From positions 1-11,416 of IMG/VR virus record IMGVR_UViG_3300022188_000577: 11,416 nt of DNA. One strand, given 5' to 3'. Below the pieces are notes generated by a model. The model saw only the letters and a list, made by a program, of their open reading frames with translations, did not search any database and had not been told where the DNA came from. The position numbers and the translations under genes are program-made. Positions 1-11,416 of the stretch are shown here, piece by piece; the stretch's first letter is position 1; each line of letters starts with the position of its first letter.

Positions 1-66
1 AGCTTGAAGGTTTAACCGTTATCTGAATGTATGTAGAATCCACATCCAAATCCGTTAGAATTCCTT
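1..66 (+). repeat. Terminal direct repeat, copy 1 (circular assembly overlap)
   Basis: agcttgaagg...ttagaattcctt is identical to 11351-11416. Confidence 0.98.
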
Positions 67-1132
67 TATACTCTAATTCCGAACCATACCAAACCTCAAT
101 TACAAATGGATTAAAGTATTCCCAATCGTCTTCATAGAACTTATGCCATGTCCCATCATCATACGGATTTGTGAGCTTTGCGTATAATATCTCGACTTCT
201 TCTGTTAGTCCGTTTTCATCCGTTTGGGCTTCTGCTATTAAGTTGTTGTTTCTATCATATACTTTAACAACTCTGCCATATAATGGATTACCGTTTATAT
301 CTGTAACCTTGAATACTACTGTATAAACTCTTTGGATTTCTCCGCTTATATCTCCTTCAGCCAAATACCACCCGATTTTCCAGTTATGCGGTTTACAGTT
401 TACATATTTAGCCACATTCGGAGAGCGCAACCTGTAAACATTCGCTAACCTATCTTTTGACGAACCTCTTAAATTTCTAAAAACTTGCCCAGCAGAGTTT
501 ACGACCCATGTCATTTGCGCAACAGTCGTCTTAATGTAAACATCCTGAACGTCGCAATTAACCACGTCTTCCATATAACCCCATTTGCCCGTTATTATGT
601 TCTTGTGAAACTCAGTATATCTTAAGTCTCTCACTACATTGTGGAATAAACAACCTTTAACTTCCTTTGCATATCCTCTAAAGTCAAATCTATGTGAATC
701 ATCTCTTAGTATAAAGCTACACGCATAAAACTTAACATCGCTATCTTTCTCAACATTGAAGTATGCGATATATGAGCTTTGATATAGCACAAATGTACAT
801 CCTTTTTGATAATTTTCTTCTCCATCTGTAATTACTTTCTCACCAAAAGTAGCGTTACAGTTTGCTTTAAAGTTTATAATGCGTTCACCATTATAGCTTG
901 CTTGAGTTTCAACTACTAAAACCGTTCCCTTCTCTTCGAATAGCGTTTCAGTGCTACCATCGCCGAATTGAAGCTTAGCAGTAGTTTTGTAAACACATTC
1001 GCTAAGTTTCGTGAATTTTCCCCATCCATTATTTACGTCGGCTTGATAAATATCCTCAAAAGTGTAAGGGCTTCCGTTTTTTGACCCTACTACTGTAATT
1101 GTATTGGTTGTAGAATCGTAAGTTATCGGCAT
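1..1132 (-). CDS. 400-aa putative adhesin/terminal fibre protein, N-terminal 377 codons; continues across the junction at 11350->11280
   Basis: Hand translation: ATG at 1132 (2 nt after the upstream stop), no stop down to base 1. Begins MPITYDSTTNTITVVGSKNGSPYTFEDIYQADVNNGWG. Beta-rich middle, then a prealbumin/carboxypeptidase-regulatory-like motif VFKVTDINGNPLYGRVVKVYDRNNNLIAEAQTDENG. Function is inferred. Confidence 0.88.
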   Translation of the reverse strand, partial: MPITYDSTTNTITVVGSKNGSPYTFEDIYQADVNNGWGKFTKLSECVYKTTAKLQFGDGSTETLFEEKGTVLVVETQASYNGERIINFKANCNATFGEKVITDGEENYQKGCTFVLYQSSYIAYFNVEKDSDVKFYACSFILRDDSHRFDFRGYAKEVKGCLFHNVVRDLRYTEFHKNIITGKWGYMEDVVNCDVQDVYIKTTVAQMTWVVNSAGQVFRNLRGSSKDRLANVYRLRSPNVAKYVNCKPHNWKIGWYLAEGDISGEIQRVYTVVFKVTDINGNPLYGRVVKVYDRNNNLIAEAQTDENGLTEEVEILYAKLTNPYDDGTWHKFYEDDWEYFNPFVIEVWYGSELEYKGILTDLDVDSTYIQITVKPSS

Positions 1133-1771: not shown

Positions 1772-2425
1772 TTATATTATTATGATATAGTTATTATCTC
1801 CATACCAATCTATGATTACTTTTTTCGTCATTACGTAACTATTATAGGGTTTTTCAGAATATACGTCAACGATTACGTTTAATATTCTACATAATTCATC
1901 GTAAAACGTATTTTTTGTTATGTTATTATGTATTTCAATACATAAATTTGGCTTGTCTCTCTTTAAAACTTCGTATGCACCTAATAAAACGTTATACTCG
2001 TGTCCTTCCGTATCTATTTTAATAAAATCTACTTTTATGTTATTGAATAAGTTATCAATCGTTTCAGTCTCTACGTCGTAAGTATCTTTTGTTTTAACTT
2101 CTTTATGCTTGTCATCAACTATTGAAGAATGAACTAACGTCTCTTTATCGTAAAACCTCGTTTTTCCTTTTATACTTGATAAAGCTATGTTATAACAAAA
2201 GACTTTCTTATTTAACAATCCCAATTCTTCCATATTTTTAATTAAAATGTTGTATAACTTTTTGTTAGGTTCAAATGCATAAACTTTTTCTGAAATTTGT
2301 GATAAAAAATAAGACCATTGCCCATCTGATGCTCCAATGTCTATTGCCACATTATACTTCTTATCCTTGAAATATTCCTTTATTTTCTTTTCGTGGACAT
2401 TCCATTTAAGTATCTCAATCACCAT
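1772..2425 (-). CDS. FkbM-family SAM-dependent methyltransferase
   Basis: Motifs IDIGASDG, VYAFEPN, NIALS, TIDNL, FIKIDTEGHEYNVLLGA, IEIH. Confidence 0.93.
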   Translation of the reverse strand: MVIEILKWNVHEKKIKEYFKDKKYNVAIDIGASDGQWSYFLSQISEKVYAFEPNKKLYNILIKNMEELGLLNKKVFCYNIALSSIKGKTRFYDKETLVHSSIVDDKHKEVKTKDTYDVETETIDNLFNNIKVDFIKIDTEGHEYNVLLGAYEVLKRDKPNLCIEIHNNITKNTFYDELCRILNVIVDVYSEKPYNSYVMTKKVIIDWYGDNNYIIII

Positions 2426-3123
2426 TTTACCTTATCTAATATATCCTTTTCCGATAACTTTCCTTTAAACTCTATTAGTATAAAGTTATCATACTGTAAA
2501 CAATTATCAATTACTTCAATATATTCCGCATATACTTTTTTTAACATGTCTTTAAATGTTTCCTTTGTTAATTCATTATATGGAAAGTAATCAAATATCT
2601 TTCTAAAAAATACTGAAATCATAAAGGCATTAGTTATCTGCTTCCCCATTGCATACTTGTCAGTTTTATCCCACCAACCCATGTAAGAATTATATACTTC
2701 TTCAACAGGTCTTTTCAACGCTATAACTTTACAATGCTTAAATCTTTCACATATTTCCTTTAAATGTATCCATATGTAAACATCTTTTATTAACCAATTT
2801 CCATCCAATCTATCTATTTCTCTTAATATTCTTAGATAACTCCCTCCTACTTCAATATCTGGATACAAGTTCCAAACCCATTCGTGCATCCATGTTTTTG
2901 CATTTTCATAAATTCGTTCAAGTAATTCTTTTGGTAGCTTATAATAATCGTGGTTAATTTCACCTATTACGTCGTGAGTTAAGCAATTTCCTCTTAACGC
3001 AAACTCTGGATAATCTTTATTGAAAGGTTCATACAATCCATATAAGTTATAATGTTCTTTTAATACTTTATATGTGAATGCTGTTCCCGTTCTCGGAAAA
3101 GAAATTATCATGAACTTAATCAT
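2419..3123 (-). CDS. PAPS-dependent sulfotransferase
   Basis: N-terminal 5'-PSB loop ISFPRTGTAF, then YEPF, and 3'-PB-like motif VIALKRPVEEVYNSY. Overlaps the methyltransferase start by 7 nt. Confidence 0.85.
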   Translation of the reverse strand: MIKFMIISFPRTGTAFTYKVLKEHYNLYGLYEPFNKDYPEFALRGNCLTHDVIGEINHDYYKLPKELLERIYENAKTWMHEWVWNLYPDIEVGGSYLRILREIDRLDGNWLIKDVYIWIHLKEICERFKHCKVIALKRPVEEVYNSYMGWWDKTDKYAMGKQITNAFMISVFFRKIFDYFPYNELTKETFKDMLKKVYAEYIEVIDNCLQYDNFILIEFKGKLSEKDILDKVKW

Positions 3124-3144
3124 GTTAAAAAAATAATTACACTA

Positions 3145-3152
3145 TTTTTAAA
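3145..3152 (-). promoter_or_regulatory. Candidate archaeal TATA box for the sulfotransferase operon
   Basis: TTTAAAAA on the minus strand, 22-29 nt upstream of the ATG at 3123, preceded by purine-rich GGAGAA. Confidence 0.45.
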
Positions 3153-3238
3153 TTCTCCGTCTTTTTAATAATCTTCTTAATAAACTTTTCTTTTCATACA
3201 ATTTCATTATCACATATATTATAAAAAATAATATTAGG

Positions 3239-3532
3239 TTAGCAAGCAAATCTACTACGTTCATTTCTTTGTTCTTCTTCAACTTTTTCTATAAAACTCT
3301 TCACGACGTTCTGGTAAGTATCGAGTATCACTGTAATCGTGTTCAAAGTTGCAAACGCCGATGCATACAGTAATGTTATAGCGTCCATTTCTTGCCCTTT
3401 TTCCTTTAGCTTTTCATTATAAGCTTCTGCTATTTCTTCAAGTAAGCTTACATACTCATCTACTATCTTTTTTAATCTCTTTTTTGATATCTCCTCTGCT
3501 TCTTTGAACCTTCTGTACACTATCATCCTCAT
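3239..3532 (-). CDS. Hypothetical helical/coiled-coil protein, 97 aa
   Basis: ATGA overlap with the upstream gene; charged helical composition. Confidence 0.8.
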   Translation of the reverse strand: MRMIVYRRFKEAEEISKKRLKKIVDEYVSLLEEIAEAYNEKLKEKGQEMDAITLLYASAFATLNTITVILDTYQNVVKSFIEKVEEEQRNERSRFAC

Positions 3533-3801
3533 TTCAATATGAATTCAATTTCTATTCCATCCTTGAACTTAACCCAGATTGTATCGTTCTTTCTTACTTC
3601 ATATGATATACCATCATCCTTTGATTTTGCGTATAATTTGTTATTATGAACGAATAAATCATCTAATTCATCAAGGTTATACTGATCGTCTATCAAAGTT
3701 ATCGATTCTATGTCTTCTTTATTTTTCTTTATATACTCTATAAATTTCCTTATCTTTTCAACTTTTTTTCTATTGAAAAAGTTTGTTATCACGTTTCCCA
3801 T
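3529..3801 (-). CDS. Hypothetical protein, 90 aa
   Basis: ATG preceded by an SD-like GTGA; overlaps both neighbours. Confidence 0.8.
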   Translation of the reverse strand: MGNVITNFFNRKKVEKIRKFIEYIKKNKEDIESITLIDDQYNLDELDDLFVHNNKLYAKSKDDGISYEVRKNDTIWVKFKDGIEIEFILK

Positions 3802-4004
3802 ATTATCACTACAGTTCTATTTCCTTTTTTCTTCGTTTTTATTTCTTCTTTTATTTCTAATTCTTTTACTGCTGAATATACAGCTCCTATCGTTGAATTC
3901 GCTTCTTTCACTATTTCCTTTACCAACTCTGATAATTCTATTTCCTTTATTCCTTTTGCTTTTAACTCATTTATTTTTTTCAAGATGTGTTCTTTCAATG
4001 TCAC
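3789..4004 (-). CDS. Winged helix-turn-helix DNA-binding protein 1 (71 aa from a GTG start)
   Basis: Aligns without gaps to 8883..9089 if it starts at GTG 4004. A TATA/BRE sits 27-34 nt upstream of that GTG, so the track start at 4052 is probably too long. Confidence 0.72.
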   Translation of the reverse strand: MTLKEHILKKINELKAKGIKEIELSELVKEIVKEANSTIGAVYSAVKELEIKEEIKTKKKGNRTVVIIWET

Positions 4005-4030
4005 GTTAATGTTATTTATTATCATCATCA

Positions 4031-4044
4031 TATTTAAATTTTTC
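4031..4044 (-). promoter_or_regulatory. BRE + TATA box for the wHTH1 operon
   Basis: Minus strand reads GAAAAA-TTTAAATA. Confidence 0.6.
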
Positions 4045-4066
4045 TTCATCAACTCGAAAATTAAAC

Positions 4067-4114
4067 AAATTGTTAAACGAATTTTTTGATAAATTGTTTG
4101 ATAAATTATTGAAT
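4067..4114. repeat. Four imperfect tandem 12-bp repeats
   Basis: aaattgttaaac / gaattttttgat / aaattgtttgat / aaattattgaat. Confidence 0.6.
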
Positions 4115-4175
4115 AAATGGTCCATTAGAGTATTTACTTTACAAAAATACTATATTTTATTTAACGACAATTACT

Positions 4176-4183
4176 TTTAATAA
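4176..4183 (+). promoter_or_regulatory. Candidate TATA box for 4209..4421
   Basis: TTTAATAA 26-33 nt upstream of the ATG. Confidence 0.45.
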
Positions 4184-4208
4184 GTTACTTGATACGTTAC
4201 TTATTAAA

Positions 4209-4421
4209 ATGTCTTACAACAAAGTTTCAAAGCTTTTTAAAAGCGTTTCGTGTTTGTTTAAACTGATTGAACTTTTTGAGAGAATTGATAATTTCCAAAA
4301 GGATCTAATTATTATAAAAGAGAGGATTAAATACATTAACGACGAAGTTACAGAAATTAAAAAAGACGTTAAAGAGTTAAGAAAGTTTATTTTCGAAATC
4401 TTAATTAAAAACAAGAAGTAA
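4209..4421 (+). CDS. Small coiled-coil protein, 70 aa
   Basis: Heptad pattern RIDNFQKDLIIIKERIKYINDEVTEIKKDVKELRKFI; upstream TATA box. Confidence 0.7.
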   Translation: MSYNKVSKLFKSVSCLFKLIELFERIDNFQKDLIIIKERIKYINDEVTEIKKDVKELRKFIFEILIKNKK

Positions 4422-4425
4422 TCCA

Positions 4426-4593
4426 TTATTTTATTATCTTAACGATTCTTTCAAACGTTGGTTTGTTCTTTAACATTACTCTAAAGACTTTATTACAATA
4501 AGGACATCTTTTCGTCCAATTGTATTTGTTATTCGATTTTGGTTGATATTTCATTGTTTTATTACAATGTGGGCATTGAACTATTAATATCAT
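4426..4593 (-). CDS. C4 zinc-ribbon protein, 55 aa (absent from the ORF track)
   Basis: Hand translation MILIVQCPHCNKTMKYQPKSNNKYNWTKRCPYCNKVFRVMLKNKPTFERIVKIIK*, with two CPxC motifs. Starts 9 nt after the upstream stop. Confidence 0.85.
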   Translation of the reverse strand: MILIVQCPHCNKTMKYQPKSNNKYNWTKRCPYCNKVFRVMLKNKPTFERIVKIIK

Positions 4594-4602
4594 ATTAACG
4601 AT

Positions 4603-5043
4603 TTATAATAAATAATATTTATTAAGTTGCGACGTTCCTAAGACGAAAGCTTTCTTAAATTCATAAGGTCTTTCATACCTATTGTATATTATTATCTTAT
4701 CTATTTCGTTTAAAATATCAGGGTTTAAGTTATACTTTGAAAACTCTTGCTTGATAATTGATACGTATCTTTCCCTATCAACTTTCCATTTATACTTTAA
4801 TTGCGTTTTGAATAGTTTTTGAGCGTATAACAAGTAAGTTTGTAATTCTATTGGTGTTAAGTTATACTTTTGTAAAACTCTTTTAACAGTTTGTAATATC
4901 CTTTGTTCAAACAAAAAATTAACTGTCCAGTTGTTTTTATATTTCTCAAAGTCTATTTTATCAATCGTGTAATTGTTAACGTAATTGTTAGTTCCTTCAA
5001 TGTCCCAGTTGCACTTTACTTTATAAAATTGCATTTTACTCAT
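4603..5043 (-). CDS. SIRV2-type capsid-fold paralog (putative minor structural protein), 146 aa
   Basis: VKRVLQKYNLTPIELQTYLLYAQKL...FSKYNLNPDILNEI matches the MCP C-terminal bundle (VGAILDSHGVPPNQRPFYINVAREV...WISRGLDPAIIDEI) and is clearly paralogous to 10878..11273. Confidence 0.78.
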   Translation of the reverse strand: MSKMQFYKVKCNWDIEGTNNYVNNYTIDKIDFEKYKNNWTVNFLFEQRILQTVKRVLQKYNLTPIELQTYLLYAQKLFKTQLKYKWKVDRERYVSIIKQEFSKYNLNPDILNEIDKIIIYNRYERPYEFKKAFVLGTSQLNKYYLL

Positions 5044-5057
5044 TGTTTAATTATGTT

Positions 5058-5146
5058 ACCCTTGATTTATAAACATTGAACCCTATGTGACCACTTGCCC
5101 TGTAATCCGACATGACCCTTGACTTAAATACTTTGAACCCTGCGTG
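5058..5146. repeat. Two 32-bp direct repeats, 57-bp period (5058-5089 and 5115-5146)
   Basis: acccttgatttataaacattgaaccctatgtg vs acccttgacttaaatactttgaaccctgcgtg, 26/32 identical. Confidence 0.85.
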
Positions 5147-5534
5147 TTACACTTACTTTATTCATAATCATTATTATCTTTAACTTCTTCGCCATCTCGA
5201 ATAGGTCTTTATACTTATTGACGTCTATATCGTGTTTTTTAATGAAATCAAGTATGTTTTGATAAATTAACTCAAAAGTTTTGTTTGTAAACTTTCTATG
5301 CTTGTAAACTATTTTTTTACAAAACGAAAACGTTAGCATTGCGTCCCACGACGTCCATTCACACCTTTCTATCTTTCTATTTGCATAATCTATAAAGTGT
5401 TTTTCAACTTCTAACTGATAAGCTAATTCATAATATACTTTATCATATGTTAACTCCTTTACTTTTGAAAATATGAGTTCCTGTTGTTGCTTGTTAAACT
5501 TGTTATAAGCTCTTTTTAAAGAATATTTAAGCAT
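5124..5534 (-). CDS. Divergent capsid-fold paralog, 136 aa (possibly 160 aa via a +1 shift, ending at 5051)
   Basis: TAATG coupling to the upstream gene. FSFCKKIVYKHRKFTNKTF...IKKHDID resembles MCP INVAREVYRLSRKFAGQTL...ISRGLD. Confidence 0.65.
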   Translation of the reverse strand: MLKYSLKRAYNKFNKQQQELIFSKVKELTYDKVYYELAYQLEVEKHFIDYANRKIERCEWTSWDAMLTFSFCKKIVYKHRKFTNKTFELIYQNILDFIKKHDIDVNKYKDLFEMAKKLKIIMIMNKVSVTRRVQSI

Positions 5535-6415
5535 TAAAAACCTCTACTTTGTCTATATTCTCTTAATACATCAAATTGAGTCGAATATGTAACTATTACA
5601 TGTTTTGCTATATCCTTATACCTTCTAACAAAATAATCTAATATCCTAAACAATTTCATTTTAACCCTATTTAAATAGTATCTTTTTCTTTCGTTTATTC
5701 TTTGCATTTTTCTTGTTAAATACTTTCTCATCCAATCTTCATAATTATCAACATACCTTTTTCTATACTCCAAGTATCTAACTTTATATCTCAATTTATA
5801 ATATGCTCTGTATACTTTGTTTTCCTTTGCTTTGTTAACTAAATCATTTAATGTGCTTATCAACTCAGAAGCTTTTGTTTTGTCATGTTCTTTATTAATT
5901 AATTTTTCATAATATTCAAGAGTATCCTCATATGCGTCTATTATTTTTAAATGTATATCATATGTTTTGTGTTGTTTTAACATATTCTTAAACGACTCAA
6001 CATCGTTTTTATAGTCATTTATTATCGATTCAATTTCGTTTAAAACCTCTTTTGCTTTATCATAATTTTTTGATTTAATTAAGTTTTTAACAAGCTCAAA
6101 CTTATTTCTTATTAAGTAATTTCTATCTCTTAATCTTCTTTCAACTGAATCAAGATCAACACCTCTTGCTTTTTGATACATATGTATGTAGAAAGGTAAA
6201 TTATCTATACAAAACCATACAGCCATTACAATTATTGAAATTAGTGCTGGGTTTATATCTATTCTATTTTCATCAATTATATATTGAAAATCTTTGTATC
6301 TTGATTTTAATCTGCTTAAAATTTCGTCATATTTTCTTATTATCTTATATCTTATTGAATCATATTTTCCTAAATAATACATTAATCTCTGTTCTGCTTC
6401 TTTTCCGGATATCAT
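5534..6415 (-). CDS. Basic alpha-helical protein, 293 aa, probably structural or DNA-binding
   Basis: Long ORF directly downstream of the MCP; rich in K/R/Y; helical. N-terminus (RLMYYLGKYD) weakly recalls the MCP N-terminal arm. Confidence 0.75.
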   Translation of the reverse strand: MISGKEAEQRLMYYLGKYDSIRYKIIRKYDEILSRLKSRYKDFQYIIDENRIDINPALISIIVMAVWFCIDNLPFYIHMYQKARGVDLDSVERRLRDRNYLIRNKFELVKNLIKSKNYDKAKEVLNEIESIINDYKNDVESFKNMLKQHKTYDIHLKIIDAYEDTLEYYEKLINKEHDKTKASELISTLNDLVNKAKENKVYRAYYKLRYKVRYLEYRKRYVDNYEDWMRKYLTRKMQRINERKRYYLNRVKMKLFRILDYFVRRYKDIAKHVIVTYSTQFDVLREYRQSRGF

Positions 6416-6421
6416 TATAAT

Positions 6422-6431
6422 AAAAAATAAA
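6422..6431 (-). terminator. Candidate archaeal oligo(T) terminator after the MCP gene
   Basis: TTTATTTTTT 15 nt after the stop; the same motif follows 8883..9089. Confidence 0.4.
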
Positions 6432-6446
6432 GTTAGTTAGATGCTA

Positions 6447-6809
6447 TTAATAGACGCAAGTTATTCCAAATAACGCCAAAATCTCGTCAATTATGGCTGG
6501 GTCTAAACCTCTTGAAATCCACTTGCTTCTTACTATGCAAGCCTCGTTAGTTAACGTTTGCCCTGCAAATTTCCTTGATAACCTGTAAACTTCTCTTGCA
6601 ACATTGATATAGAAAGGTCTTTGGTTTGGAGGAACTCCGTGCGAGTCTAAAATAGCACCTACTTGAGTTTCTATTGTTGCTAAGTTGCTAAATTGTGTAT
6701 CAACTTGCTCTACCATTATATCCTTTAACGCTGTAAATCTACTTTGAATTACTGTTGGGTCGACTTTTGCTTCATACTTTTTCTTCCTATATACGTCAGA
6801 CCTTACCAT
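6447..6809 (-). CDS. Major capsid protein, SIRV2/AFV1-type (Adnaviria helical MCP), 120 aa
   Basis: Basic N-terminal arm RSDVYRKKKYEAKVDPTV, then V-x-A-I-L-x-x-x-G-V...R-x-x-Y and a terminal GLDPAIIDEI. As I recall it, this parallels the rudivirus coat pattern (RYAKWQAKF...NPTV...VSAVLTQYGI...NRAIY...NPQVLDAV). Has its own strong TATA box and a downstream T-tract. Confidence 0.85.
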   Translation of the reverse strand: MVRSDVYRKKKYEAKVDPTVIQSRFTALKDIMVEQVDTQFSNLATIETQVGAILDSHGVPPNQRPFYINVAREVYRLSRKFAGQTLTNEACIVRSKWISRGLDPAIIDEILALFGITCVY

Positions 6810-6835
6810 CTCAATATATAATGTATTTTTACTAC

Positions 6836-6850
6836 TATATAAAGTTTATC
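6836..6850 (-). promoter_or_regulatory. BRE + TATA box of the MCP promoter
   Basis: Minus strand GATAAAC-TTTATATA; TATA is 27-34 nt upstream of ATG 6809. Confidence 0.7.
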
Positions 6851-6890
6851 TTGTTGTTTCACTTTTGAGTTATCAAGAACCCATTGTGTT

Positions 6891-6903
6891 CAAAATTTAT
6901 AAA
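6891..6903 (+). promoter_or_regulatory. BRE + TATA box of the divergent zinc-finger operon
   Basis: CAAAA-TTTATAAA; TATA is 23-30 nt upstream of ATG 6926. Confidence 0.65.
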
Positions 6904-6925
6904 TGAAAGGTCATGTTGGTATATT

Positions 6926-7084
6926 ATGTCAAAGGTAACCTTGTGTCCCAGATGTAATAATAATATGAAGAGTATTTATATTAAGAGAGGAGGAAAGTAC
7001 GTTATCATAGGAAAAATTTGTTTAAATTGCAAGTTATACTTCTTTTATGATATTGATACCAAAGGAAAACGTGATAAGACTTGA
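6926..7084 (+). CDS. C4 zinc-ribbon protein, 52 aa
   Basis: MSKVTLCPRC...ICLNC. ATG 6926 fits the TATA spacing; the track start at 6884 lies upstream of the promoter. Confidence 0.78.
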   Translation: MSKVTLCPRCNNNMKSIYIKRGGKYVIIGKICLNCKLYFFYDIDTKGKRDKT

Positions 7085-7412
7085 GGAAAACAAGTGTATT
7101 AGAAAGTTAGAGGACTTGTTAGACGCTGAAATAAAGACTTTAGAAAAGTTCATTAACAAAGCTTCTGAAGTTAAAAGAAGATTGTATAAGTTAGATTTAG
7201 ACGAAGACGTTAAAAAAAATGTGTTATCTGCTTACGATGAGATAGTAAGTAAGTATGTTTACGAGAATGTAATTAAAAACATCGTTTATTACACTTTATT
7301 AATATGTTACGCCAAAGTTCTAAAAGAAAAACGAAAGTTATTTTGTTATGAGGATTCAAAAGGTGCAATATACGTTCATTACCTCCCTCACATAAAAGAG
7401 TTGCAAAAATAA
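7047..7412 (+). CDS. Hypothetical helical protein, 121 aa
   Basis: ATG start, overlaps the zinc-finger gene, typical composition. Confidence 0.78.
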   Translation: MILIPKENVIRLEENKCIRKLEDLLDAEIKTLEKFINKASEVKRRLYKLDLDEDVKKNVLSAYDEIVSKYVYENVIKNIVYYTLLICYAKVLKEKRKLFCYEDSKGAIYVHYLPHIKELQK

Positions 7413-7435
7413 ACTATTCCTATCATTGTTAAGAT

Positions 7436-8596
7436 TTAAGTAGATAAATGTAACAAGAATTTTGGATAATTGTTTTCCGCGAGAAACTTATCGTAATACT
7501 TTTTAGTTGCTTTTCTCTTTTTTTCTGTTAAATCTTGATTCTTATAAGCTTTTAACATAGTTTTTGCTAATTCAGAAGCTTCGTATTCGTAGTATTCGCA
7601 CATAAATCCATGTTCGTTTGGTTTTTGTATTATCGATTCATAATCAAAGAAATACGCAACGTCTTCTCTTATTAACTCTTTAAACAATTGATGTTTAACG
7701 CATATTACACAGTTATTAAAATATAAAGATTCTGCAATTGGCATGCAAAAACCTTCTGACTTTGAAGAAACAACATAAACTTTACTTACATTGTATAAAC
7801 TCAATATTTCCTTATAGGATAAGCTTCCTCCTAAATCAAGTTGTATTATCCTTTTCTTTTCTATTAACTTTTTTATGAATTTGTGTTGCTTTAAGTTGTA
7901 ATCTGTTATTAAAACGTGCACGGTATCTTCTATCTTGTTTTTTAAACAATGTTTATAAAACATAGTTAAAGCTTTTACGTATTTATCCCATCCTTTTCTT
8001 GTATTTTTGTTTGCATTTGTCATATAAACGAACTTATCAGTTAAATCAACGTTATAGTTTTCTTTAAAGAATTCATACGCCCAATCTTTTAGTTTTTTGG
8101 CATCATTTATATAACTTTTTGGTATGGAGTGATAAATTACGTCTGTTATTTTTACGTCGTGTTTTCTTATTATGTTGTAAGTGTAATAAGAATTTGCTAT
8201 TATTTTAGCATACTTTGAAATATTTTGTAGATTTAACTTCAAAAGTAAGTTTTTGTATAAAGTGTCTCCTTCGACTGTGTAATATATGATATTTCTTTTT
8301 TTAGTTGACATTGAAATAACGTGAGTTAAGTTCGAAACGTAAAAAGAACCAAGAGGAACTATGAATATTCTTTTATCAAATAGTTGCATCTTTCTTATAA
8401 AGTTAGAAGATAAAGAATTTTCAAATATGTCAATGTATGCGTGAATTTGATTTTGTTTTAATATCTCAGAAATCGTTTCTGCTACGTTTTTAAAAGATAT
8501 AGCGTCTACGTAAAAAATAGCAACCGTTGACGATTTCAAATCGTCCAAATAATCTGATATCGATTGTGAAAGAGTGGTGTCGTCTCGCCACTTCAT
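7436..8596 (-). CDS. GT-B fold glycosyltransferase, family GT4
   Basis: IANSYYT, VIYHSI, RKGWD and the signature VVSSKSEGFCMPIAES (E-x7-E). GT4 enzymes are common in rudiviruses and lipothrixviruses. Confidence 0.92.
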   Translation of the reverse strand: MKWRDDTTLSQSISDYLDDLKSSTVAIFYVDAISFKNVAETISEILKQNQIHAYIDIFENSLSSNFIRKMQLFDKRIFIVPLGSFYVSNLTHVISMSTKKRNIIYYTVEGDTLYKNLLLKLNLQNISKYAKIIANSYYTYNIIRKHDVKITDVIYHSIPKSYINDAKKLKDWAYEFFKENYNVDLTDKFVYMTNANKNTRKGWDKYVKALTMFYKHCLKNKIEDTVHVLITDYNLKQHKFIKKLIEKKRIIQLDLGGSLSYKEILSLYNVSKVYVVSSKSEGFCMPIAESLYFNNCVICVKHQLFKELIREDVAYFFDYESIIQKPNEHGFMCEYYEYEASELAKTMLKAYKNQDLTEKKRKATKKYYDKFLAENNYPKFLLHLST

Positions 8597-8604
8597 TTTT
8601 CATC

Positions 8605-8640
8605 AAACTTTTAAAAAAATTATCGAACAAATTTTTCAAT
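8605..8640. repeat. Three imperfect tandem 12-bp repeats resembling 4067-4114
   Basis: aaacttttaaaa / aaattatcgaac / aaatttttcaat. Confidence 0.45.
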
Positions 8641-8657
8641 CTTTTTTAATCATCTAA

Positions 8658-8806
8658 CAGTTGTGATTTTATTATTAGTTTTATTATACAATACTTCAGG
8701 ATATATATTAGCAAAAAATCAATAGTATTGTATTATAGTAGTAATAATTAATTAAAGTAATTATCAAATAGTTAATTAATTAAATTAAAAAATAAAATCA
8801 CTACTG
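8658..8806. repeat. Nested inverted repeats in the longest intergenic region (candidate origin)
   Basis: Outer pair 8658-8673/8791-8806 (15/16). Inner pairs 8682-8695/8724-8737 (13/14) and 8745-8755/8772-8782 (11/11). Confidence 0.75.
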
Positions 8807-8843
8807 AGTTAAAAAAAATCTGTCGATTTTCGGATAACACACC

Positions 8844-8858
8844 GCAAAGGTTTAATAT
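8844..8858 (+). promoter_or_regulatory. BRE + TATA box for the wHTH2 operon
   Basis: GCAAAGG-TTTAATAT; TATA is 25-32 nt upstream of ATG 8883. Confidence 0.7.
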
Positions 8859-8882
8859 GCTAAAGCTAATAATAAAATAACC

Positions 8883-9089
8883 ATGAACGTGAAGCAACTT
8901 GTATTACTACTGCTACAAGATTATAAGGACATGGGGGTTACCAAAATAGAGGAAAGGGTATTGGTAGAGGAAGTTATAAAGAGAACAGGATGTCACAGGC
9001 AGACTGTGTATAACGTAATACATTGGTTAAAAGTTAGAGGTGTAATAAGGGTTGAAGGCTCGGGTAGGAACAAGTTTATCTTACTTTAA
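8883..9089 (+). CDS. Winged helix-turn-helix DNA-binding protein 2, 68 aa
   Basis: LVEEVIKRTGCHRQTVYNVIHWLKVRGVIRVEG is a typical HTH recognition helix followed by L-x-x-x-G-x-I and a wing. Confidence 0.85.
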   Translation: MNVKQLVLLLLQDYKDMGVTKIEERVLVEEVIKRTGCHRQTVYNVIHWLKVRGVIRVEGSGRNKFILL

Positions 9090-9100
9090 TTTATTTTTTT
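9090..9100 (+). terminator. Candidate oligo(T) terminator after wHTH2
   Basis: TTTATTTTTTT immediately after the stop. Confidence 0.35.
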
Positions 9101-9110
9101 AAAATCGTAT

Positions 9111-9863
9111 ATGAAGTATCGTTATAGGGATATAACATATAGACTTAAAAGGTACAAACTGTACTGGAAACAAAGACTTTATTATATTTTAGTTGATTTG
9201 ATAAAAGAACGCGCGTCTGAAAGGTTATTAGATGAATTAACTAAGCAAATGTTTTTTGAGTGGATTGTTATTCCTAAACTAAAATCTTTAGGATTTACAG
9301 ACGAAGAGTTAAGGAGAATGTTTCCTTCATATCTCGGATATGCAAAGAAGTTGTGGAACAAAAAATACAAGTATGTTTTTTCTTCTTTAGACGTTGAACA
9401 CGATAACGTTTATTACGAAATGATTCAAAGAGGATTCGATAAAGAAAAGAGTAAAACAGCGTTAAATATTGGTAGAAAACATCCTGTCGTTGCAAAAGCT
9501 TATATTAAAGTTTCGTCAACTCCTTTAATTTATCCACCCCTTCTAAAAGCACTTCCCGTTTCTACTAAATTTAGTTACGAAATAGTTCCACCAATATTAG
9601 TATCAAAAGAGTTAAAAACTAAATTTAGTTACAAATTAACTCCACCTTTAACTGTTGAAAAAGAAATTAACGTATCTTTTAATTACTCTCTAGTCCCACC
9701 TTTGGAAGTTGAAAAAGAAATTAACGTGTCTTTTAACTATTCGCTTGTTCCACCAATCAAAATATCGAAAGAAGTTAACGTATCTTTTAATTACGAACTA
9801 GTTCCACCCTTAAAAGTTATAAAAGAAATTGAAATTATATTTAACTATGAAATTACAAGCTAA
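9111..9863 (+). CDS. Capsid-fold N-terminal domain fused to six 18-aa repeats (putative terminal/fibre anchor), 250 aa
   Basis: VIPKLKSLGF...PSYLGYAKKLWNKKYKY...MIQRGFD matches the paralog pattern; C-terminal repeats of the type VPPLEVEKEINVSFNYSL. Confidence 0.78.
   Translation: MKYRYRDITYRLKRYKLYWKQRLYYILVDLIKERASERLLDELTKQMFFEWIVIPKLKSLGFTDEELRRMFPSYLGYAKKLWNKKYKYVFSSLDVEHDNVYYEMIQRGFDKEKSKTALNIGRKHPVVAKAYIKVSSTPLIYPPLLKALPVSTKFSYEIVPPILVSKELKTKFSYKLTPPLTVEKEINVSFNYSLVPPLEVEKEINVSFNYSLVPPIKISKEVNVSFNYELVPPLKVIKEIEIIFNYEITS
9531..9854 (+). repeat. Six tandem 54-bp coding repeats
   Basis: YPPLLKALPVSTKFSYEI / VPPILVSKELKTKFSYKL / TPPLTVEKEINVSFNYSL / VPPLEVEKEINVSFNYSL / VPPIKISKEVNVSFNYEL / VPPLKVIKEIEIIFNYEI. 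Confidence 0.95.
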
Positions 9864-10866
9864 GGTAATACTGAAAATAATAAAAAAAGACGGTAGGGAA
9901 GTAGTTATCGAAAAAGAGTGCAATAGTTTTCACGAAAACTTTTTCAGAATGTTAAAGTCTGTGTATACGAATGACTTAGTTATAACGAATAGGGATGGTT
10001 CAACAACAACTTTAAATCACTTCGAAAAAGTAAGCATTATAAACACAGACGGAACGAAATACACGAAATGGAGGATTGCAATAGGACAAGGAATTTCAGA
10101 TAACGATTTAACGACAATTATCGACGAAAAAGACGCTACAGTTGAATTAGACGAAGCTAACAGAGTTGCAACTGATTACGCAAAGTTTGGTCCTTACTCA
10201 GAATCAAAAACGATTGACGCCGTAGCACTTTATGTAAAAACTAACTTTAGTTCTGGTGCGGGAAAGTTTGCTTGGTCTTTTAACGCACCTTTGCTTTTGG
10301 AAAATGTCGGGACAACGACGATAGAGGCTGGAGACGTTTTAGTAGTTGGAATACAAACTAAGTTAGTCGCAGGGACAAACGTAACGATTCACGATTCTTT
10401 TGTCTATGTTTCTTTATCGTTTTTAGCGTATTACATGATTGAATACGAATATTCACCTGTGGGCGATGACCAACTTCAAATAGCTTCAAAATATAAAGAT
10501 TTAGCTTTGAGTGGTAACGCAGACTACTGGGCTTATTACGATAGTTATTACGACGAAAAACTCGATTTCTTGAATCATTCAGCAGAAATGAAAATTTATC
10601 ATTCTGATGGGACTTCTGTAACTGAATCTGCAACTGCAACGATTGATTTAACTAATAGAAAAGTTATAATCTACGCTTCTCACTTTTATTCAGAATCAAA
10701 GACAGTGACGAAAGTAGAACTTTACATTCGTTTAAAAGGATGGTATTATAGCGATGGATGGGTGCAAGGCGCGTTGTATCACAAACTTTTAACTGCAGAT
10801 AACTTGAACGTAACAGTGGACGTTAACTACACGTTTAAACCAAAGTTTGAAATATCTATACCTTAA
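9847..10866 (+). CDS. Beta-rich putative virion terminal-structure protein with an internal duplication, 339 aa
   Basis: Likely start is ATG 9847. Two related halves, each containing NR...YA...YSESKT(I/V)..V.LY. IAIGQG recalls tail-fibre/baseplate N-terminal domains. Confidence 0.75.
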   Translation: MKLQAKVILKIIKKDGREVVIEKECNSFHENFFRMLKSVYTNDLVITNRDGSTTTLNHFEKVSIINTDGTKYTKWRIAIGQGISDNDLTTIIDEKDATVELDEANRVATDYAKFGPYSESKTIDAVALYVKTNFSSGAGKFAWSFNAPLLLENVGTTTIEAGDVLVVGIQTKLVAGTNVTIHDSFVYVSLSFLAYYMIEYEYSPVGDDQLQIASKYKDLALSGNADYWAYYDSYYDEKLDFLNHSAEMKIYHSDGTSVTESATATIDLTNRKVIIYASHFYSESKTVTKVELYIRLKGWYYSDGWVQGALYHKLLTADNLNVTVDVNYTFKPKFEISIP

Positions 10867-10877
10867 CGAAAATATTT

Positions 10878-11273
10878 ATGACGTGTAAACATTGGAACTT
10901 TCAAGGATACTTTAAGTATAAGCAAAGTTGGACTGACGAAAGGTTAAAAGAGAAAATTGAACCAATTGTAGATAGAATTATAAATAAGTGGAAATCTTGG
11001 CAAATAAGGTTGGACTTTTGCTTAAACAACGTTAAAAGAGTTTTAGATAGATTTGACATAACATCCGTTCAAAGAAAATATTATTTACTTTATGCTATTT
11101 TATTATGGTCTGTAATGTTTTTGTATGAATGGTTGGTCGATAGGAAAAGAGAACATTCTATTTTGAGATATAAGTTCGAAAGTTACGGCTTAGATCCGAA
11201 CATTCTAAACGAAATAGATAGAGTTGTTATATGGAACAAAGTTATTCAGCCTGTTAACAGGTTTTGGGAATAA
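10878..11273 (+). CDS. SIRV2-type capsid-fold paralog (putative minor structural protein), 131 aa
   Basis: VKRVLDRFDITSVQRKYYLLYA...KFESYGLDPNILNEID matches both the MCP and 4603..5043. Confidence 0.8.
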   Translation: MTCKHWNFQGYFKYKQSWTDERLKEKIEPIVDRIINKWKSWQIRLDFCLNNVKRVLDRFDITSVQRKYYLLYAILLWSVMFLYEWLVDRKREHSILRYKFESYGLDPNILNEIDRVVIWNKVIQPVNRFWE

Positions 11274-11350: not shown

Positions 11351-11416
11351 AGCTTGAAGGTTTAACCGTTATCTGAATGTATGTAGAATCCACATCCAAA
11401 TCCGTTAGAATTCCTT
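11351..11416 (+). repeat. Terminal direct repeat, copy 2 (circular assembly overlap)
   Basis: Identical to 1-66. Confidence 0.98.

What the first reader, a model, noticed from the sequence alone, without database searches (positions are those of the whole stretch)
4603..11273. At least five capsid-fold paralogs in three loci: a virion built from one specialised fold
Seen: 6447..6809, 4603..5043, 10878..11273, the N-terminal domain of 9111..9863 and, more weakly, 5124..5534 share V-x-x-x-L-x-x-x-(G/N/D)...Y-(L/I)-x-(Y/V)-A-x-x-(L/V)...(RG/YG/YN)-(L/F)-(D/N). 5534..6415 may be a sixth. Established: characterised adnaviruses use one MCP (homodimer) or two (heterodimer). Inference: the 120-aa gene with its own promoter is the major subunit. 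The others could be initiator, terminator or adaptor subunits that insert in the helix and carry appendages, possibly building two different virion ends.
Basis: partly seen in the sequence, partly recalled or inferred. Interest (0 to 1): 0.85.

Follow-up and report, generated by a model that had tools for sequence, protein, structure and literature searches.

The report
Capsid-fold gene family in archaeal virus
A small filamentous-type archaeal virus from a Guaymas Basin hydrothermal vent metagenome carries four certain and one probable copy of the helical capsid fold that builds rod-shaped archaeal viruses, one of them fused to a fibre-like repeat. This is more copies per genome than I found described, but fusions of this fold to other domains are already published.

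Summary
The observation largely holds. The 120-aa gene (6447-6809) is a genuine SIRV2-fold major capsid protein (MCP), scoring above the Pfam cut-offs. The 146-aa gene, the 131-aa gene and the N-terminal 140 residues of the 250-aa gene are true paralogs:
- hhalign against MCP profiles gives probability 87-96% and E 1e-6 to 5e-9, while about 170 control comparisons never went below E 0.019.
- The AlphaFold model of p146 finds six adnaviral MCP structures as its top six PDB hits.

The 136-aa gene is probable only: 81% against a 19-sequence profile, but its model matched no MCP. The 293-aa gene is not a member.

The family splits into two sequence classes: class I (p120, p250N, probably p136) and class II (p131, p146). 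A natural class I-class II fusion exists. Relatives keep the triad of small class I, small class II and class I fused to an appendage domain, which in one relative is a ConA-like lectin.

Most likely p120 builds the body, probably paired with p131, and p250 anchors a repeat fibre through its capsid-like domain. The roles are inferred, not shown.

MCP-like minor structural proteins and three-MCP genomes were published in 2026, so this is a new variant of a known kind.

Seen in passing: the genome maps as an 11,350-bp circle, unlike the linear genomes described for Adnaviria.

The parts
6447..6809 (-). p120: class I SIRV2-fold major capsid protein (MCP1-like)
   Evidence: It passes the Pfam cut-offs: Sulf_coat_C E 1.1e-6 and SFV1_VP4 E 2.1e-6. 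tblastn finds SFV1 VP4 and the SBFV2 MCP at 30-32% identity. The profile containing it hits the SSRV1 (6wq0) and SIRV2 (3j9x) coat proteins at E 5e-9 and 7e-8. It is 74% identical to the MCP of L003.
6836..6843 (-). TATA-like box (TTTATATA), 27-34 nt upstream of the p120 ATG
   Evidence: Read directly from the sequence. Its function is inferred from the known archaeal promoter layout and was not tested.
6416..6432 (-). T-rich tract between the p120 stop and the p293 start; possibly a partial terminator
   Evidence: Read from the sequence. L003 has a similar T-rich tract after its MCP. This is weak evidence in a genome of 29% G+C.
10878..11273 (+). p131: class II capsid-fold paralog, the conserved ortholog of the class II gene in relatives (candidate MCP2)
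   Evidence: blastp vs p146 E 1e-24 and vs p120 E 3e-4. hhalign vs MCP profiles gives 87.1% / 4e-6 and 93.6% / 2e-7. It is 58% identical to the L003 128-aa gene that directly follows the MCP there, 46% to the L023 126-aa protein and 36% to the L016 126-aa protein.
4603..5043 (-). p146: class II capsid-fold paralog, a divergent duplicate specific to this lineage
   Evidence: Pfam hit to Sulf_coat_C is below threshold (E 0.0032). hhalign vs the MCP profile gives 89.1% / 2.3e-6 over 110 columns. In the AlphaFold model, residues 38-120 form four helices at pLDDT 77-92. Its top six Foldseek PDB hits are all adnaviral MCPs: 3j9x, 6wq0, 3f2e (TM 0.77, rmsd 1.6 A over 73 columns), 5w7g_B, 3fbz and 3fbl. 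A TATA-like TTTATAAA lies at 5066-5073.
9111..9530 (+). p250 N-terminal domain: class I capsid-fold domain (anchor)
   Evidence: hhalign vs the MCP profile gives 96.0% / 4.7e-9 over 111 columns. An exhaustive HMMER search of 1.84 billion proteins with this family found, outside its own family, only three proteins. Each of these also matches the MCP profile at 95-97%, and two sit at the MCP position of viral contigs.
9534..9857 (+). p250 C-terminal domain: six tandem 18-aa repeats (PP-L/I-x-V-x-K-E-I-N-V-S-F-N-Y-x-L-V type) carrying five N-x-S/T sequons; putative fibre or appendage
   Evidence: TRF finds period 54 at 9641-9830. A regex finds six units at residues 142-249. The C-terminal part of the L022 378-aa ortholog matches this region (E 8e-5).
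5124..5534 (-). p136: probable, structurally unconfirmed, degenerate class I capsid-fold paralog
   Evidence: hhalign gives 75.1% / 2.5e-5 vs B2, 81.3% / 1.2e-5 vs the 19-sequence class I profile, and only 21.6% / 1e-3 vs B3. None of 150 shuffles reached its score. Its AlphaFold model (pLDDT 73) matched no MCP in PDB or BFVD. No homolog was found outside this virus.
5534..6415 (-). p293: NOT a capsid-fold paralog; coiled-coil-rich protein with one hydrophobic, transmembrane-like segment (about residues 52-70)
   Evidence: No profile similarity, whole or in three segments (E >= 0.028). Pfam gives only weak coiled-coil or spectrin-type hits. The Kyte-Doolittle 19-residue maximum is 2.09.
9829..10866 (+). 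p345: beta-rich acidic protein encoded between p250 and p131; the most strain-variable gene and a candidate host-recognition component
   Evidence: It is 31% identical to the L003 366-aa protein, which likewise follows the p250 ortholog. It differs at 24 positions from the second assembly L020, while all capsid-fold genes except p131 (one mismatch) are identical there. It has no Pfam family.
1..66 (.). Exact 66-nt direct terminal repeat (identical to 11351-11416): the contig closes into an 11,350-bp circular map
   Evidence: The independent assembly L020 reads straight through the junction. A 400-aa ORF (1132 down to 1, continuing 11350 down to 11280, minus strand) is continuous across it.

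Best explanation
The window is the complete, circular-mapping 11.35-kb genome of an uncultured filamentous-type archaeal virus from Guaymas Basin. It has expanded the SIRV2-type helical capsid fold into a small gene family with a division of labour.

The copies fall into two sequence classes:
- Class I: p120, the N-domain of p250, and probably p136.
- Class II: p131 and p146.

Proposed roles:
- p120 is the major DNA-coating subunit.
- The conserved class II protein p131 is most likely its heterodimer partner (MCP2-like), as in most adnaviruses.
- p250 uses its class I domain as an anchor that co-assembles with the capsid lattice, probably at a filament end and paired with a class II subunit. 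It displays a C-terminal repeat fibre, probably glycosylated, next to the variable protein p345.
- p146 is a lineage-specific extra copy. It may form a second specialised pair with its neighbour p136, if p136 is real.

Shown: the homology, the fold of p146, the two classes, the domain fusions, and conservation of the triad in relatives. Inferred: stoichiometry, pairing, and location in the virion.
For: - Homology and fold.
- Two classes: p250N and p136 match class I profiles and not class II (p250N 96% vs 11.8%; p136 75% vs 0.2%). p146 and p131 match each other at E 1e-24 and class I at only 87-94%.
- Natural fusion of the two classes: P0009 (329 aa, from the same ENA assembly as L004/L007, fragments of this virus and of its L003-type relative) has an N-domain matching class I (96.7% / 5e-10) and a C-domain matching class II (95.2% / 3e-8).
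- Gene order: in L003, L004, L005 and L022 the class II gene directly follows the MCP gene.
- Conserved triad (small class I, small class II, class I plus a roughly 250-aa C-terminal domain) in L022, L023 and L024. L027 lacks class II and instead has two tandem small class I genes.
- Anchor plus appendage: the L027 324-aa protein is a class I domain plus a ConA-like lectin (Laminin_G_3, E 2e-27). p250 is a class I domain plus six 18-aa repeats.
- Published MCP-like minor structural proteins in rudi-, ahmun-, chiyou- and baiyanviruses.
- p120 as the major subunit: Pfam above cut-off, highest conservation, TATA-like box and downstream T-tract.
Against: - No expression, proteomic or multimer-modelling data exist; the tool set offered no multimer prediction.
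- In this genome, and in L023/L024, the class II gene lies after the fusion/fibre genes rather than next to the MCP. Here p131 starts 11 nt after p345, with no clear promoter of its own.
- T-rich tracts follow the MCP gene both here and in L003.
- Both points fit class II being a low-abundance partner of the fusion protein rather than a co-major subunit.
- The N-domain of P0009 is slightly closer to the p250N family than to the MCPs, so the fusion is equally compatible with a p250:p131 pairing.
- P0009 is known from a single 1.36-kb contig.
- In L016 a separate MCP pair exists alongside a class II gene.
- The p136 model did not match MCP structures.
- Class II proteins have a Trp/aromatic-rich N-terminus unlike the typical basic DNA-wrapping helix.
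Confidence: 0.55

Rival explanations
1. p120 alone builds the filament body as a homodimer, as in rudiviruses. All other capsid-fold proteins (p131, p146, p250, p136) are low-copy initiator, terminator or adaptor subunits at the ends, perhaps as class I:class II cap heterodimers such as p250:p131 and p136:p146.
For: - T-rich terminator-like tracts directly follow the MCP gene here and in L003.
- p131 is encoded right after p250-p345, and the class II gene follows the fusion gene in L023 and L024.
- The P0009 N-domain is closest to the p250N family.
- L016 has a standard MCP pair plus a separate class II gene.
- p120 resembles the homodimeric rudiviral MCPs as well as SFV1 VP4.
- p136 and p146 are adjacent, and p146 has its own TATA-like box.
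Against: - The class II gene is MCP-adjacent in L003/L022.
- Every non-rudiviral adnavirus characterised so far uses two MCPs.
- The one relative without class II has two tandem small MCP genes instead.
- T-rich spacers are expected anyway at 29% G+C.
Confidence: 0.3
2. Some of the extra paralogs (especially p146 and p136) are not virion components at all. They could be intracellular DNA-binding or assembly factors, or inhibitors of competing viruses, derived from the capsid fold.
For: [quoted passage not shown]
- p146 and p136 occur only in this virus lineage and lack orthologs in L003, L022, L023 and L024.
- p136 has lost the RGLD-type motif.
Against: - They lie in the MCP operon, between the MCP gene and the downstream genes.
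- p146 keeps all three family motifs and a confidently modelled MCP-type bundle.
- There is no positive evidence for any other function.
Confidence: 0.12
3. The resemblance is a compositional or helical-periodicity artefact among lysine-rich helical proteins of an AT-rich genome.
For: All the proteins are basic (pI 9.0-9.6) and helical. Pairwise identities to p120 are only 12-22%. Pfam fails to call p131, p250 and p136.
Against: - About 170 control comparisons with other helical, basic ORFs of the same and related genomes never fell below E 0.019.
- Shuffles never reached the p136 score.
- The p146 model retrieves only adnaviral MCPs at the top of 350,542 PDB chains.
- The exhaustive search with the p250N profile retrieved MCP-like proteins and nothing else.
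- For p136 alone, the artefact reading keeps a probability of about 0.3.
Confidence: 0.03

Closest known systems
Heterodimeric MCP1/MCP2 pairs of Lipothrixviridae, Ungulaviridae and Tristromaviridae (e.g. SFV1 VP4/VP5, AFV1 ORF132/ORF140)
   Same: There are two divergent paralogs of the SIRV2 fold. The genes are adjacent in relatives of this virus (L003/L022), as VP5-VP4 are in SFV1. p120 is about 30% identical to SFV1 VP4. The p146 model superposes on AFV1 and SIRV MCP structures.
   Different: - Class II shows no sequence similarity to SFV1 VP5.
- In this genome the class II ortholog is not next to the MCP gene.
- There are two class II and two to three class I copies.
- The genome is 11.35 kb and maps as a circle, whereas those viruses have linear genomes of 17.6-41.5 kb with inverted terminal repeats.
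MCP-like minor structural proteins of adnaviruses: the rudiviral Q8QL30 family, and N-terminal MCP-like plus C-terminal jelly-roll (DUF6385) proteins of BaiyanV2, Chiyouviridae and Ahmunviridae (Microbiome 2026, PMC13700489)
   Same: p250 and its relatives (L003 358 aa, L022 378 aa, L023 379 aa, L024 375 aa, L027 324 aa) have an N-terminal MCP-like domain followed by a non-helical C-terminal domain. In L027 that domain is a ConA-like jelly-roll lectin.
   Different: - No DUF6385 hit.
- The C-terminal part of p250 is six 18-aa tandem repeats.
- No detectable sequence similarity to SIRV2 ORF488, ORF564 or ORF1070.
- Here the MCP-like domain is recognisable at sequence-profile level (96%), not only through structure modelling.
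'Hydrothermal vent rod-like virus' with three short MCP homologs (92, 93 and 100 aa) (PMC13700489)
   Same: More than two MCP-fold genes in one hydrothermal-vent adnavirus-like genome, which the authors read as a more complex packaging pattern.
   Different: This genome has four to five copies of 120-146 aa plus one fusion. I could not compare the sequences, because that genome was not available in the tools.
Rudiviridae (SIRV2): a single MCP forming a homodimer, with terminal fibres made of P1070
   Same: The p120-containing MCP profile (A3) hits the SIRV2 coat protein at E 7e-8, and SIRV2 ORF134 matches the enriched class I profile (hmmsearch E 3.9e-11; hhalign 90.7%). A glycosyltransferase gene lies near the MCP gene.
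   Different: No P1070, P564 or P488 homologs. There are several MCP paralogs. The map is circular. No Holliday-junction resolvase or other rudiviral replication gene was recognised.

Membership tests
SIRV2-fold major capsid protein family of Adnaviria (Pfam Sulf_coat_C PF12193, SFV1_VP4 PF25647, MCP_C PF21660) | The sequence matches the curated family model above its gathering score | tested here: met
   Met for p120 only: 29.2 bits against a cut-off of 25.2, and 28.5 against 27. p146 is below threshold (18.0 bits, E 0.0032). p131, p250, p136 and p293 have no hit.
SIRV2-fold major capsid protein family of Adnaviria | Significant profile-profile similarity to MCPs over the helical-bundle region | tested here: met
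   p250N 96.0% / 4.7e-9, p146 89.1% / 2.3e-6, p131 87.1% / 4e-6. The SIRV2 MCP itself scores 90.7% / 1.2e-6 as a yardstick, and controls stayed at E >= 0.019. p136 scores 81% / 1.2e-5 against the class I profile but 21.6% against the MCP-centred profile, so it is inconclusive. p293 does not meet the feature.
SIRV2-fold major capsid protein family of Adnaviria | The predicted structure is the four-helix bundle and superposes on solved MCPs | tested here: inconclusive
   Met for p146: the top six PDB hits are all adnaviral MCPs, with TM 0.76-0.77 and rmsd 1.6-1.9 A to 3f2e and 3fbl. Not met for p136: no MCP among the hits, best E 1.1-2.5.
SIRV2-fold major capsid protein family of Adnaviria | Forms homo- or heterodimers that wrap A-form dsDNA and make up the bulk of the virion | not testable with these tools
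   No multimer or protein-DNA prediction was available, and no virion data exist.
Realm Adnaviria (as described in the ICTV profile 2025) | Linear dsDNA genome of 17.6-41.5 kb with terminal inverted repeats | tested here: not met
   The contig has an exact 66-nt direct terminal repeat and no inverted terminal repeat, giving a unique length of 11,350 bp. A 400-aa ORF is continuous across the junction, and the independent assembly L020 reads through it (definition). A circular map does not prove that the virion DNA is circular.
MCP-like minor structural proteins (N-terminal MCP-like domain plus C-terminal beta domain; PMC13700489) | N-terminal MCP-like domain followed by a distinct C-terminal domain | tested here: met
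   In p250, residues 1-137 are class I and residues 142-249 are six 18-aa repeats. The relatives L023_379, L024_375 and L027_324 score 95.5-97.7% for the N-domain.
MCP-like minor structural proteins (N-terminal MCP-like domain plus C-terminal beta domain; PMC13700489) | The C-terminal domain is a single jelly-roll of the DUF6385 type | tested here: not met
   No DUF6385 hit in p250, p345 or the relatives' fusion proteins. L027_324 instead carries Laminin_G_3, a ConA-like lectin, at E 2e-27.
MCP-like minor structural proteins (N-terminal MCP-like domain plus C-terminal beta domain; PMC13700489) | Present in virions as a minor, terminal component | not testable with these tools
   This needs virion proteomics or cryo-EM/ET.

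The most novel reading that the evidence does not exclude
This virus and its relatives (L022, L023, L027) would be a previously undescribed adnavirus-like lineage with very small genomes (about 5-11 kb) that are truly circular. The DNA would be coated by combinatorial class I:class II capsid-fold heterodimers: one pair for the filament body and specialised pairs (p250:class II, p136:p146) for the ends. A circle folded into a rod has two DNA turn-back ends, which would call for such dedicated cap subunits. One of those subunits would carry the receptor-binding fibre or lectin.
Probability: 0.15. Interest if true: 0.85.

Novelty: new variant of a known kind. Interest (0 to 1): 0.58.

Why it matters
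Adnaviruses are defined by one capsid fold used once or twice per genome. How their filaments are started, ended and fitted with receptor-binding structures is largely unknown.

This 11-kb genome devotes about a fifth of its coding capacity to four or five copies of that fold. Its relatives fuse the fold to a lectin or to each other. Together these give a compact, testable system for one idea: that filament ends and appendages are attached by capsid-like adaptor subunits, much as vertex or portal specialists derive from major capsid proteins in other viruses.

The two-class pattern and the natural class I-class II fusion give concrete pairs to model or co-express.

Separately, a circular-mapping 11.35-kb genome with an adnaviral MCP and no recognisable replication gene does not fit the current description of the realm. 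It deserves checking.

Tried and rejected
- Megablast of the whole window against phage and archaeal-virus records: no match.
- tblastn of p146 against the same records: none.
- Word-indexed protein searches with p146 and with the p146/p131 alignment: only the family itself.
- IMG/VR scans with p146, A1 and A2: only the window itself.
- Two scans of 185,579 reference genomes, with the MCP and class II alignments: nothing, so there is no host or provirus lead.
- PDB sequence searches with the class II and p250N profiles: no MCP.
- Class II vs SFV1 VP5 / SBFV2 gp34: no similarity.
- SIRV2 minor structural proteins ORF488, ORF564, ORF1070, ORF309 and ORF436 vs all three profiles: nothing. I therefore could not link p250 by sequence to the published rudiviral MCP-like protein.
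- p293 as a sixth paralog, whole and as residues 1-110, 100-200 and 185-293: rejected. Its 'ARGVD' stretch, which resembles the RGLD motif by eye, is not supported by any profile alignment.
- p136 structure: modelled with an alignment that already contained MCP-like sequences, which biases the model towards the fold. It still did not retrieve MCPs.
- Selection test between the window and L020: uninformative, because apart from one mismatch in p131 the capsid-fold genes are identical.
- Candidate family 'Samediviridae' (Thermococcales adnaviruses from vents): rejected as the home of this virus. Those genomes are linear with inverted terminal repeats, 12-22 kb, 34-54% G+C, and encode PCNA, MCM and PriS.
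- The L002 359-aa protein as a second tandem-MCP protein: only its C-terminal half is MCP-like.

Full report
WHAT THE WINDOW IS

The window is the whole contig IMGVR_UViG_3300022188_000577. It comes from a Guaymas Basin hydrothermal vent metagenome. G+C is about 29%. No nucleotide-level relative exists among deposited phage and archaeal-virus genomes.

THE 120-AA GENE IS A REAL ADNAVIRAL MCP

- p120 (6447-6809, minus strand) passes the curated Pfam cut-offs for Sulf_coat_C (29.2 bits, cut-off 25.2) and SFV1_VP4 (28.5 bits, cut-off 27).
- By tblastn it finds only lipothrixviral MCPs: SFV1 VP4 and SBFV2 gp33, at 30-32% identity.
- A profile containing it hits the solved coat proteins of SSRV1 (6wq0, E 5e-9) and SIRV2 (3j9x, E 7e-8).

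THE OTHER CANDIDATES

Within the window:
- p146 and p131 are plain paralogs (blastp E 1e-24, 33-36% identity over 121 residues).
- p131 hits p120 at E 3e-4.

Relatives were needed to build profiles:
- L003, from the same sample, has an MCP 74% identical. It carries orthologs of p131 (57%), of the p250 N-domain (two copies, 44%) and of p345 (31%).
- Profile-profile comparison gave 89.7% / E 1.8e-6 for the p146/p131 family vs the MCP family, and 76.8% / E 2.1e-5 for the p250N family vs the MCP family. Both cover the same 75 columns of the bundle.
- An exhaustive HMMER search of 1.84 billion proteins with the p250N profile found, outside its own family, only three proteins.
- Each of these three also matches the MCP profile at 95-97%.
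- Two of them have basic N-termini and lie at the MCP position of glycosyltransferase-MCP gene clusters. They bridge p250N to the MCPs.

With these added to the profiles:
- p250N scores 96.0% / 4.7e-9.
- p146 scores 89.1% / 2.3e-6.
- p131 scores 87.1% / 4e-6.
- The undisputed SIRV2 MCP scores 90.7% / 1.2e-6 against the same profile.

Controls: every other window ORF, and unrelated proteins of related loci, about 170 comparisons in all, never went below E 0.019.

Structure: the AlphaFold model of p146 has a four-helix core (residues 38-120, pLDDT 77-92). Its six best matches among 350,542 PDB chains are all adnaviral MCPs: SIRV2, SSRV1, the SIRV coat C-terminus (TM 0.77, rmsd 1.6 A), and AFV1 ORF132/ORF140. 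They are capsid-fold paralogs.

p136 AND p293

p136 aligns over its whole length with class I profiles:
- 75.1% / 2.5e-5 vs B2, and 81.3% / 1.2e-5 vs a 19-sequence profile.
- None of 150 shuffles reached its score.
- The motifs are in register but degenerate.
- Its AlphaFold model (pLDDT 73) was built with MCP-like sequences in the alignment, yet retrieved no MCP from PDB or BFVD.
- It has no homolog outside this virus.
I rate it about 0.65 likely to be a decayed class I copy.

p293 shows no similarity in any form. It is a coiled-coil-rich protein with one hydrophobic segment and is not a sixth copy.

A profile scan of all ORFs of this virus found no further members.

TWO CLASSES AND HOW THEY MAY WORK

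The copies fall into two classes:
- Class I: p120, p250N, p136.
- Class II: p131, p146.
p250N and p136 match class I profiles and not class II.

Evidence that class II is the partner of a class I domain:
1. P0009 is a 329-aa ORF from an ENA assembly of unstated origin that also yielded fragments of this virus (L007) and of its L003-type relative (L004). It is a natural fusion: its N-domain is class I (96.7%) and its C-domain is class II (95.2%).
2. In L003, L004, L005 and L022 the class II gene follows the MCP gene directly, as VP5/VP4 do in SFV1.
3. The relatives L022, L023 and L024 each keep one small class I gene, one small class II gene and one class I-plus-C-terminal-domain fusion. L027 lacks class II and has two tandem small class I genes instead.

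p131 is the conserved class II ortholog: 58%, 46% and 36% identity to the relatives, against 31%, 36% and 28% for p146.

The fusion proteins support the adaptor idea. The L027 324-aa protein is a class I domain plus a ConA-like lectin (E 2e-27). p250 is a class I domain plus six 18-aa repeats carrying five N-glycosylation sequons.

My best reading:
- p120, probably together with p131, coats the DNA.
- p250 is a capsid-anchored fibre or adaptor.
- p146, and perhaps p136, form a lineage-specific specialised pair.

It is supported by T-rich tracts after the MCP gene and by the class II gene lying behind the fibre genes here and in L023/L024. It cannot be excluded. Nor can a non-virion role for some copies, as reported for the second MCP paralog of some rudiviruses.

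COMPARISON WITH WHAT IS KNOWN

- The ICTV profile states one MCP in rudivirids, two paralogous MCPs in the other families, and genus-specific minor proteins at the termini.
- A 2026 paper already reports an MCP-like domain in a conserved rudiviral/ahmunviral minor structural protein.
- The same paper reports N-terminal MCP-like plus C-terminal jelly-roll (DUF6385) proteins in BaiyanV2, Chiyouviridae and Ahmunviridae, and a vent virus with three short MCP homologs.
- So the principle is known.

What is new here:
- The number of copies (four to five in 11 kb; five in the 24.7-kb relative L016).
- The clear two-class structure.
- A covalent class I-class II fusion.
- New appendage types: 18-aa repeats and a ConA-like lectin.
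No DUF6385 is present, and there is no sequence link to the SIRV2 minor proteins.

GENOME TOPOLOGY (OUTSIDE THE FINDING)

- The contig ends in an exact 66-nt direct repeat and has no inverted terminal repeat.
- A 400-aa ORF is continuous across the junction.
- The independent assembly L020, from another Guaymas sample, reads through the junction and breaks elsewhere.
- The genome is therefore complete at 11,350 bp and maps as a circle. It could equally be a head-to-tail concatemer or a permuted form.
- Three relatives also end in exact direct repeats: L022 (127 nt), L023 (127 nt) and L027 (89 nt). However, L023 and L024 break at nearly the same place, so for those a linear genome with direct terminal repeats is not excluded.
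- Described adnaviruses are linear, 17.6-41.5 kb, with inverted terminal repeats.
- No replication protein was recognised. The recognisable enzymes are a GT1 glycosyltransferase, an FkbM-type methyltransferase and a sulfotransferase-like protein.

VERDICT

- The finding is a new variant of a known kind and of moderate interest.
- The genome topology is a more unusual side observation.

Noticed in passing
window 1-66 and 11351-11416; L020: An exact 66-nt direct terminal repeat with no inverted terminal repeat. A second assembly from another Guaymas sample (L020, 11,830 nt) reads through the junction, and its own ends overlap by 480 nt at 86% identity. The genome is complete at 11,350 bp and maps as a circle, unlike the linear 17.6-41.5 kb genomes described for Adnaviria.
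   Followed up: partly
window 1-1132 (minus strand), continuing 11350-11280: A 400-aa beta-rich ORF spans the contig junction, so it is absent from ordinary ORF lists. It has weak Ig-like hits (bMG3 and Big_1, E 1e-3 to 7e-3) and ends 6 nt from the stop of p131. It may be a fibre or receptor-binding protein.
   Followed up: partly
L022 (9641 nt), L023 (9325 nt), L027 (5187 nt): Related contigs with MCPs 42-73% identical also end in exact direct repeats of 127, 127 and 89 nt, suggesting small circular-mapping genomes of about 5.1-9.5 kb. L023 and L024 break at almost the same position, however, so real ends with direct terminal repeats are not excluded for them.
   Followed up: partly
L015:175-1164 (P0009): A single 329-aa ORF that is a natural tandem of a class I and a class II capsid-fold domain, i.e. 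a covalent 'heterodimer'. It is known from one 1.36-kb contig of ENA assembly ERZ27248007, which also yielded fragments of the window virus (L007) and of its L003-type relative (L004).
   Followed up: partly
L027:457-1431: A 324-aa protein with an N-terminal capsid-fold domain (95.5%) and a C-terminal ConA-like lectin (Laminin_G_3, E 2e-27). It looks like a receptor-binding protein anchored by a capsid-like domain.
   Followed up: yes
L016 (24.7-kb contig, ENA ERZ27296354): 3144-3524, 3872-4249, 4304-4687, 9995-10405, 10409-10918: A more distant filamentous-virus-like contig also carries five capsid-fold genes: one class II and four class I, in two clusters. Expansion of the fold is therefore not unique to the window.
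   Followed up: partly
window 9534-9857: The C-terminal part of p250 is six tandem 18-aa repeats. Three of the six repeats, the third to the fifth, carry N-x-S/T sequons (NVS and NYS), five in total. The genome also encodes a GT1 glycosyltransferase (7436-8596), an FkbM-type methyltransferase (1772-2425, E 1e-23) and a sulfotransferase-like protein (2419-3123, below the Pfam cut-off). This suggests a modified glycan coat.
   Followed up: no
window 9829-10866 and 7436-8596, compared with L020: Among the 12 genes compared between the two assemblies of this virus, nearly all differences fall in p345 and the glycosyltransferase (24 mismatches each; pN/pS about 0.3-0.4). The capsid-fold genes are identical apart from one mismatch in p131. 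This pattern is expected for host-interaction genes.
   Followed up: partly
L003:2348-2686 and L004:1403-1741: The closest relative encodes a 112-aa protein with a precomputed Pfam Cas_csx3 hit upstream of its MCP. It may be a ring-nuclease-type anti-CRISPR. The window has no counterpart.
   Followed up: no
window 8883-9089 and 3789-4052: p68 and p87 are paralogous small winged-helix proteins (blastp E 3e-7), each at the head of a gene block. p55 and p66 are small zinc-ribbon proteins. No replication initiator, polymerase, integrase or ATPase was recognised anywhere in the 11.35-kb genome.
   Followed up: partly
window 10878-10950; alignment A1: Class II proteins share a conserved aromatic N-terminal motif (W-N/D-F/I-E/Q-G-Y/T) in place of the basic N-terminus seen in class I MCPs. 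Its role is unknown.
   Followed up: no
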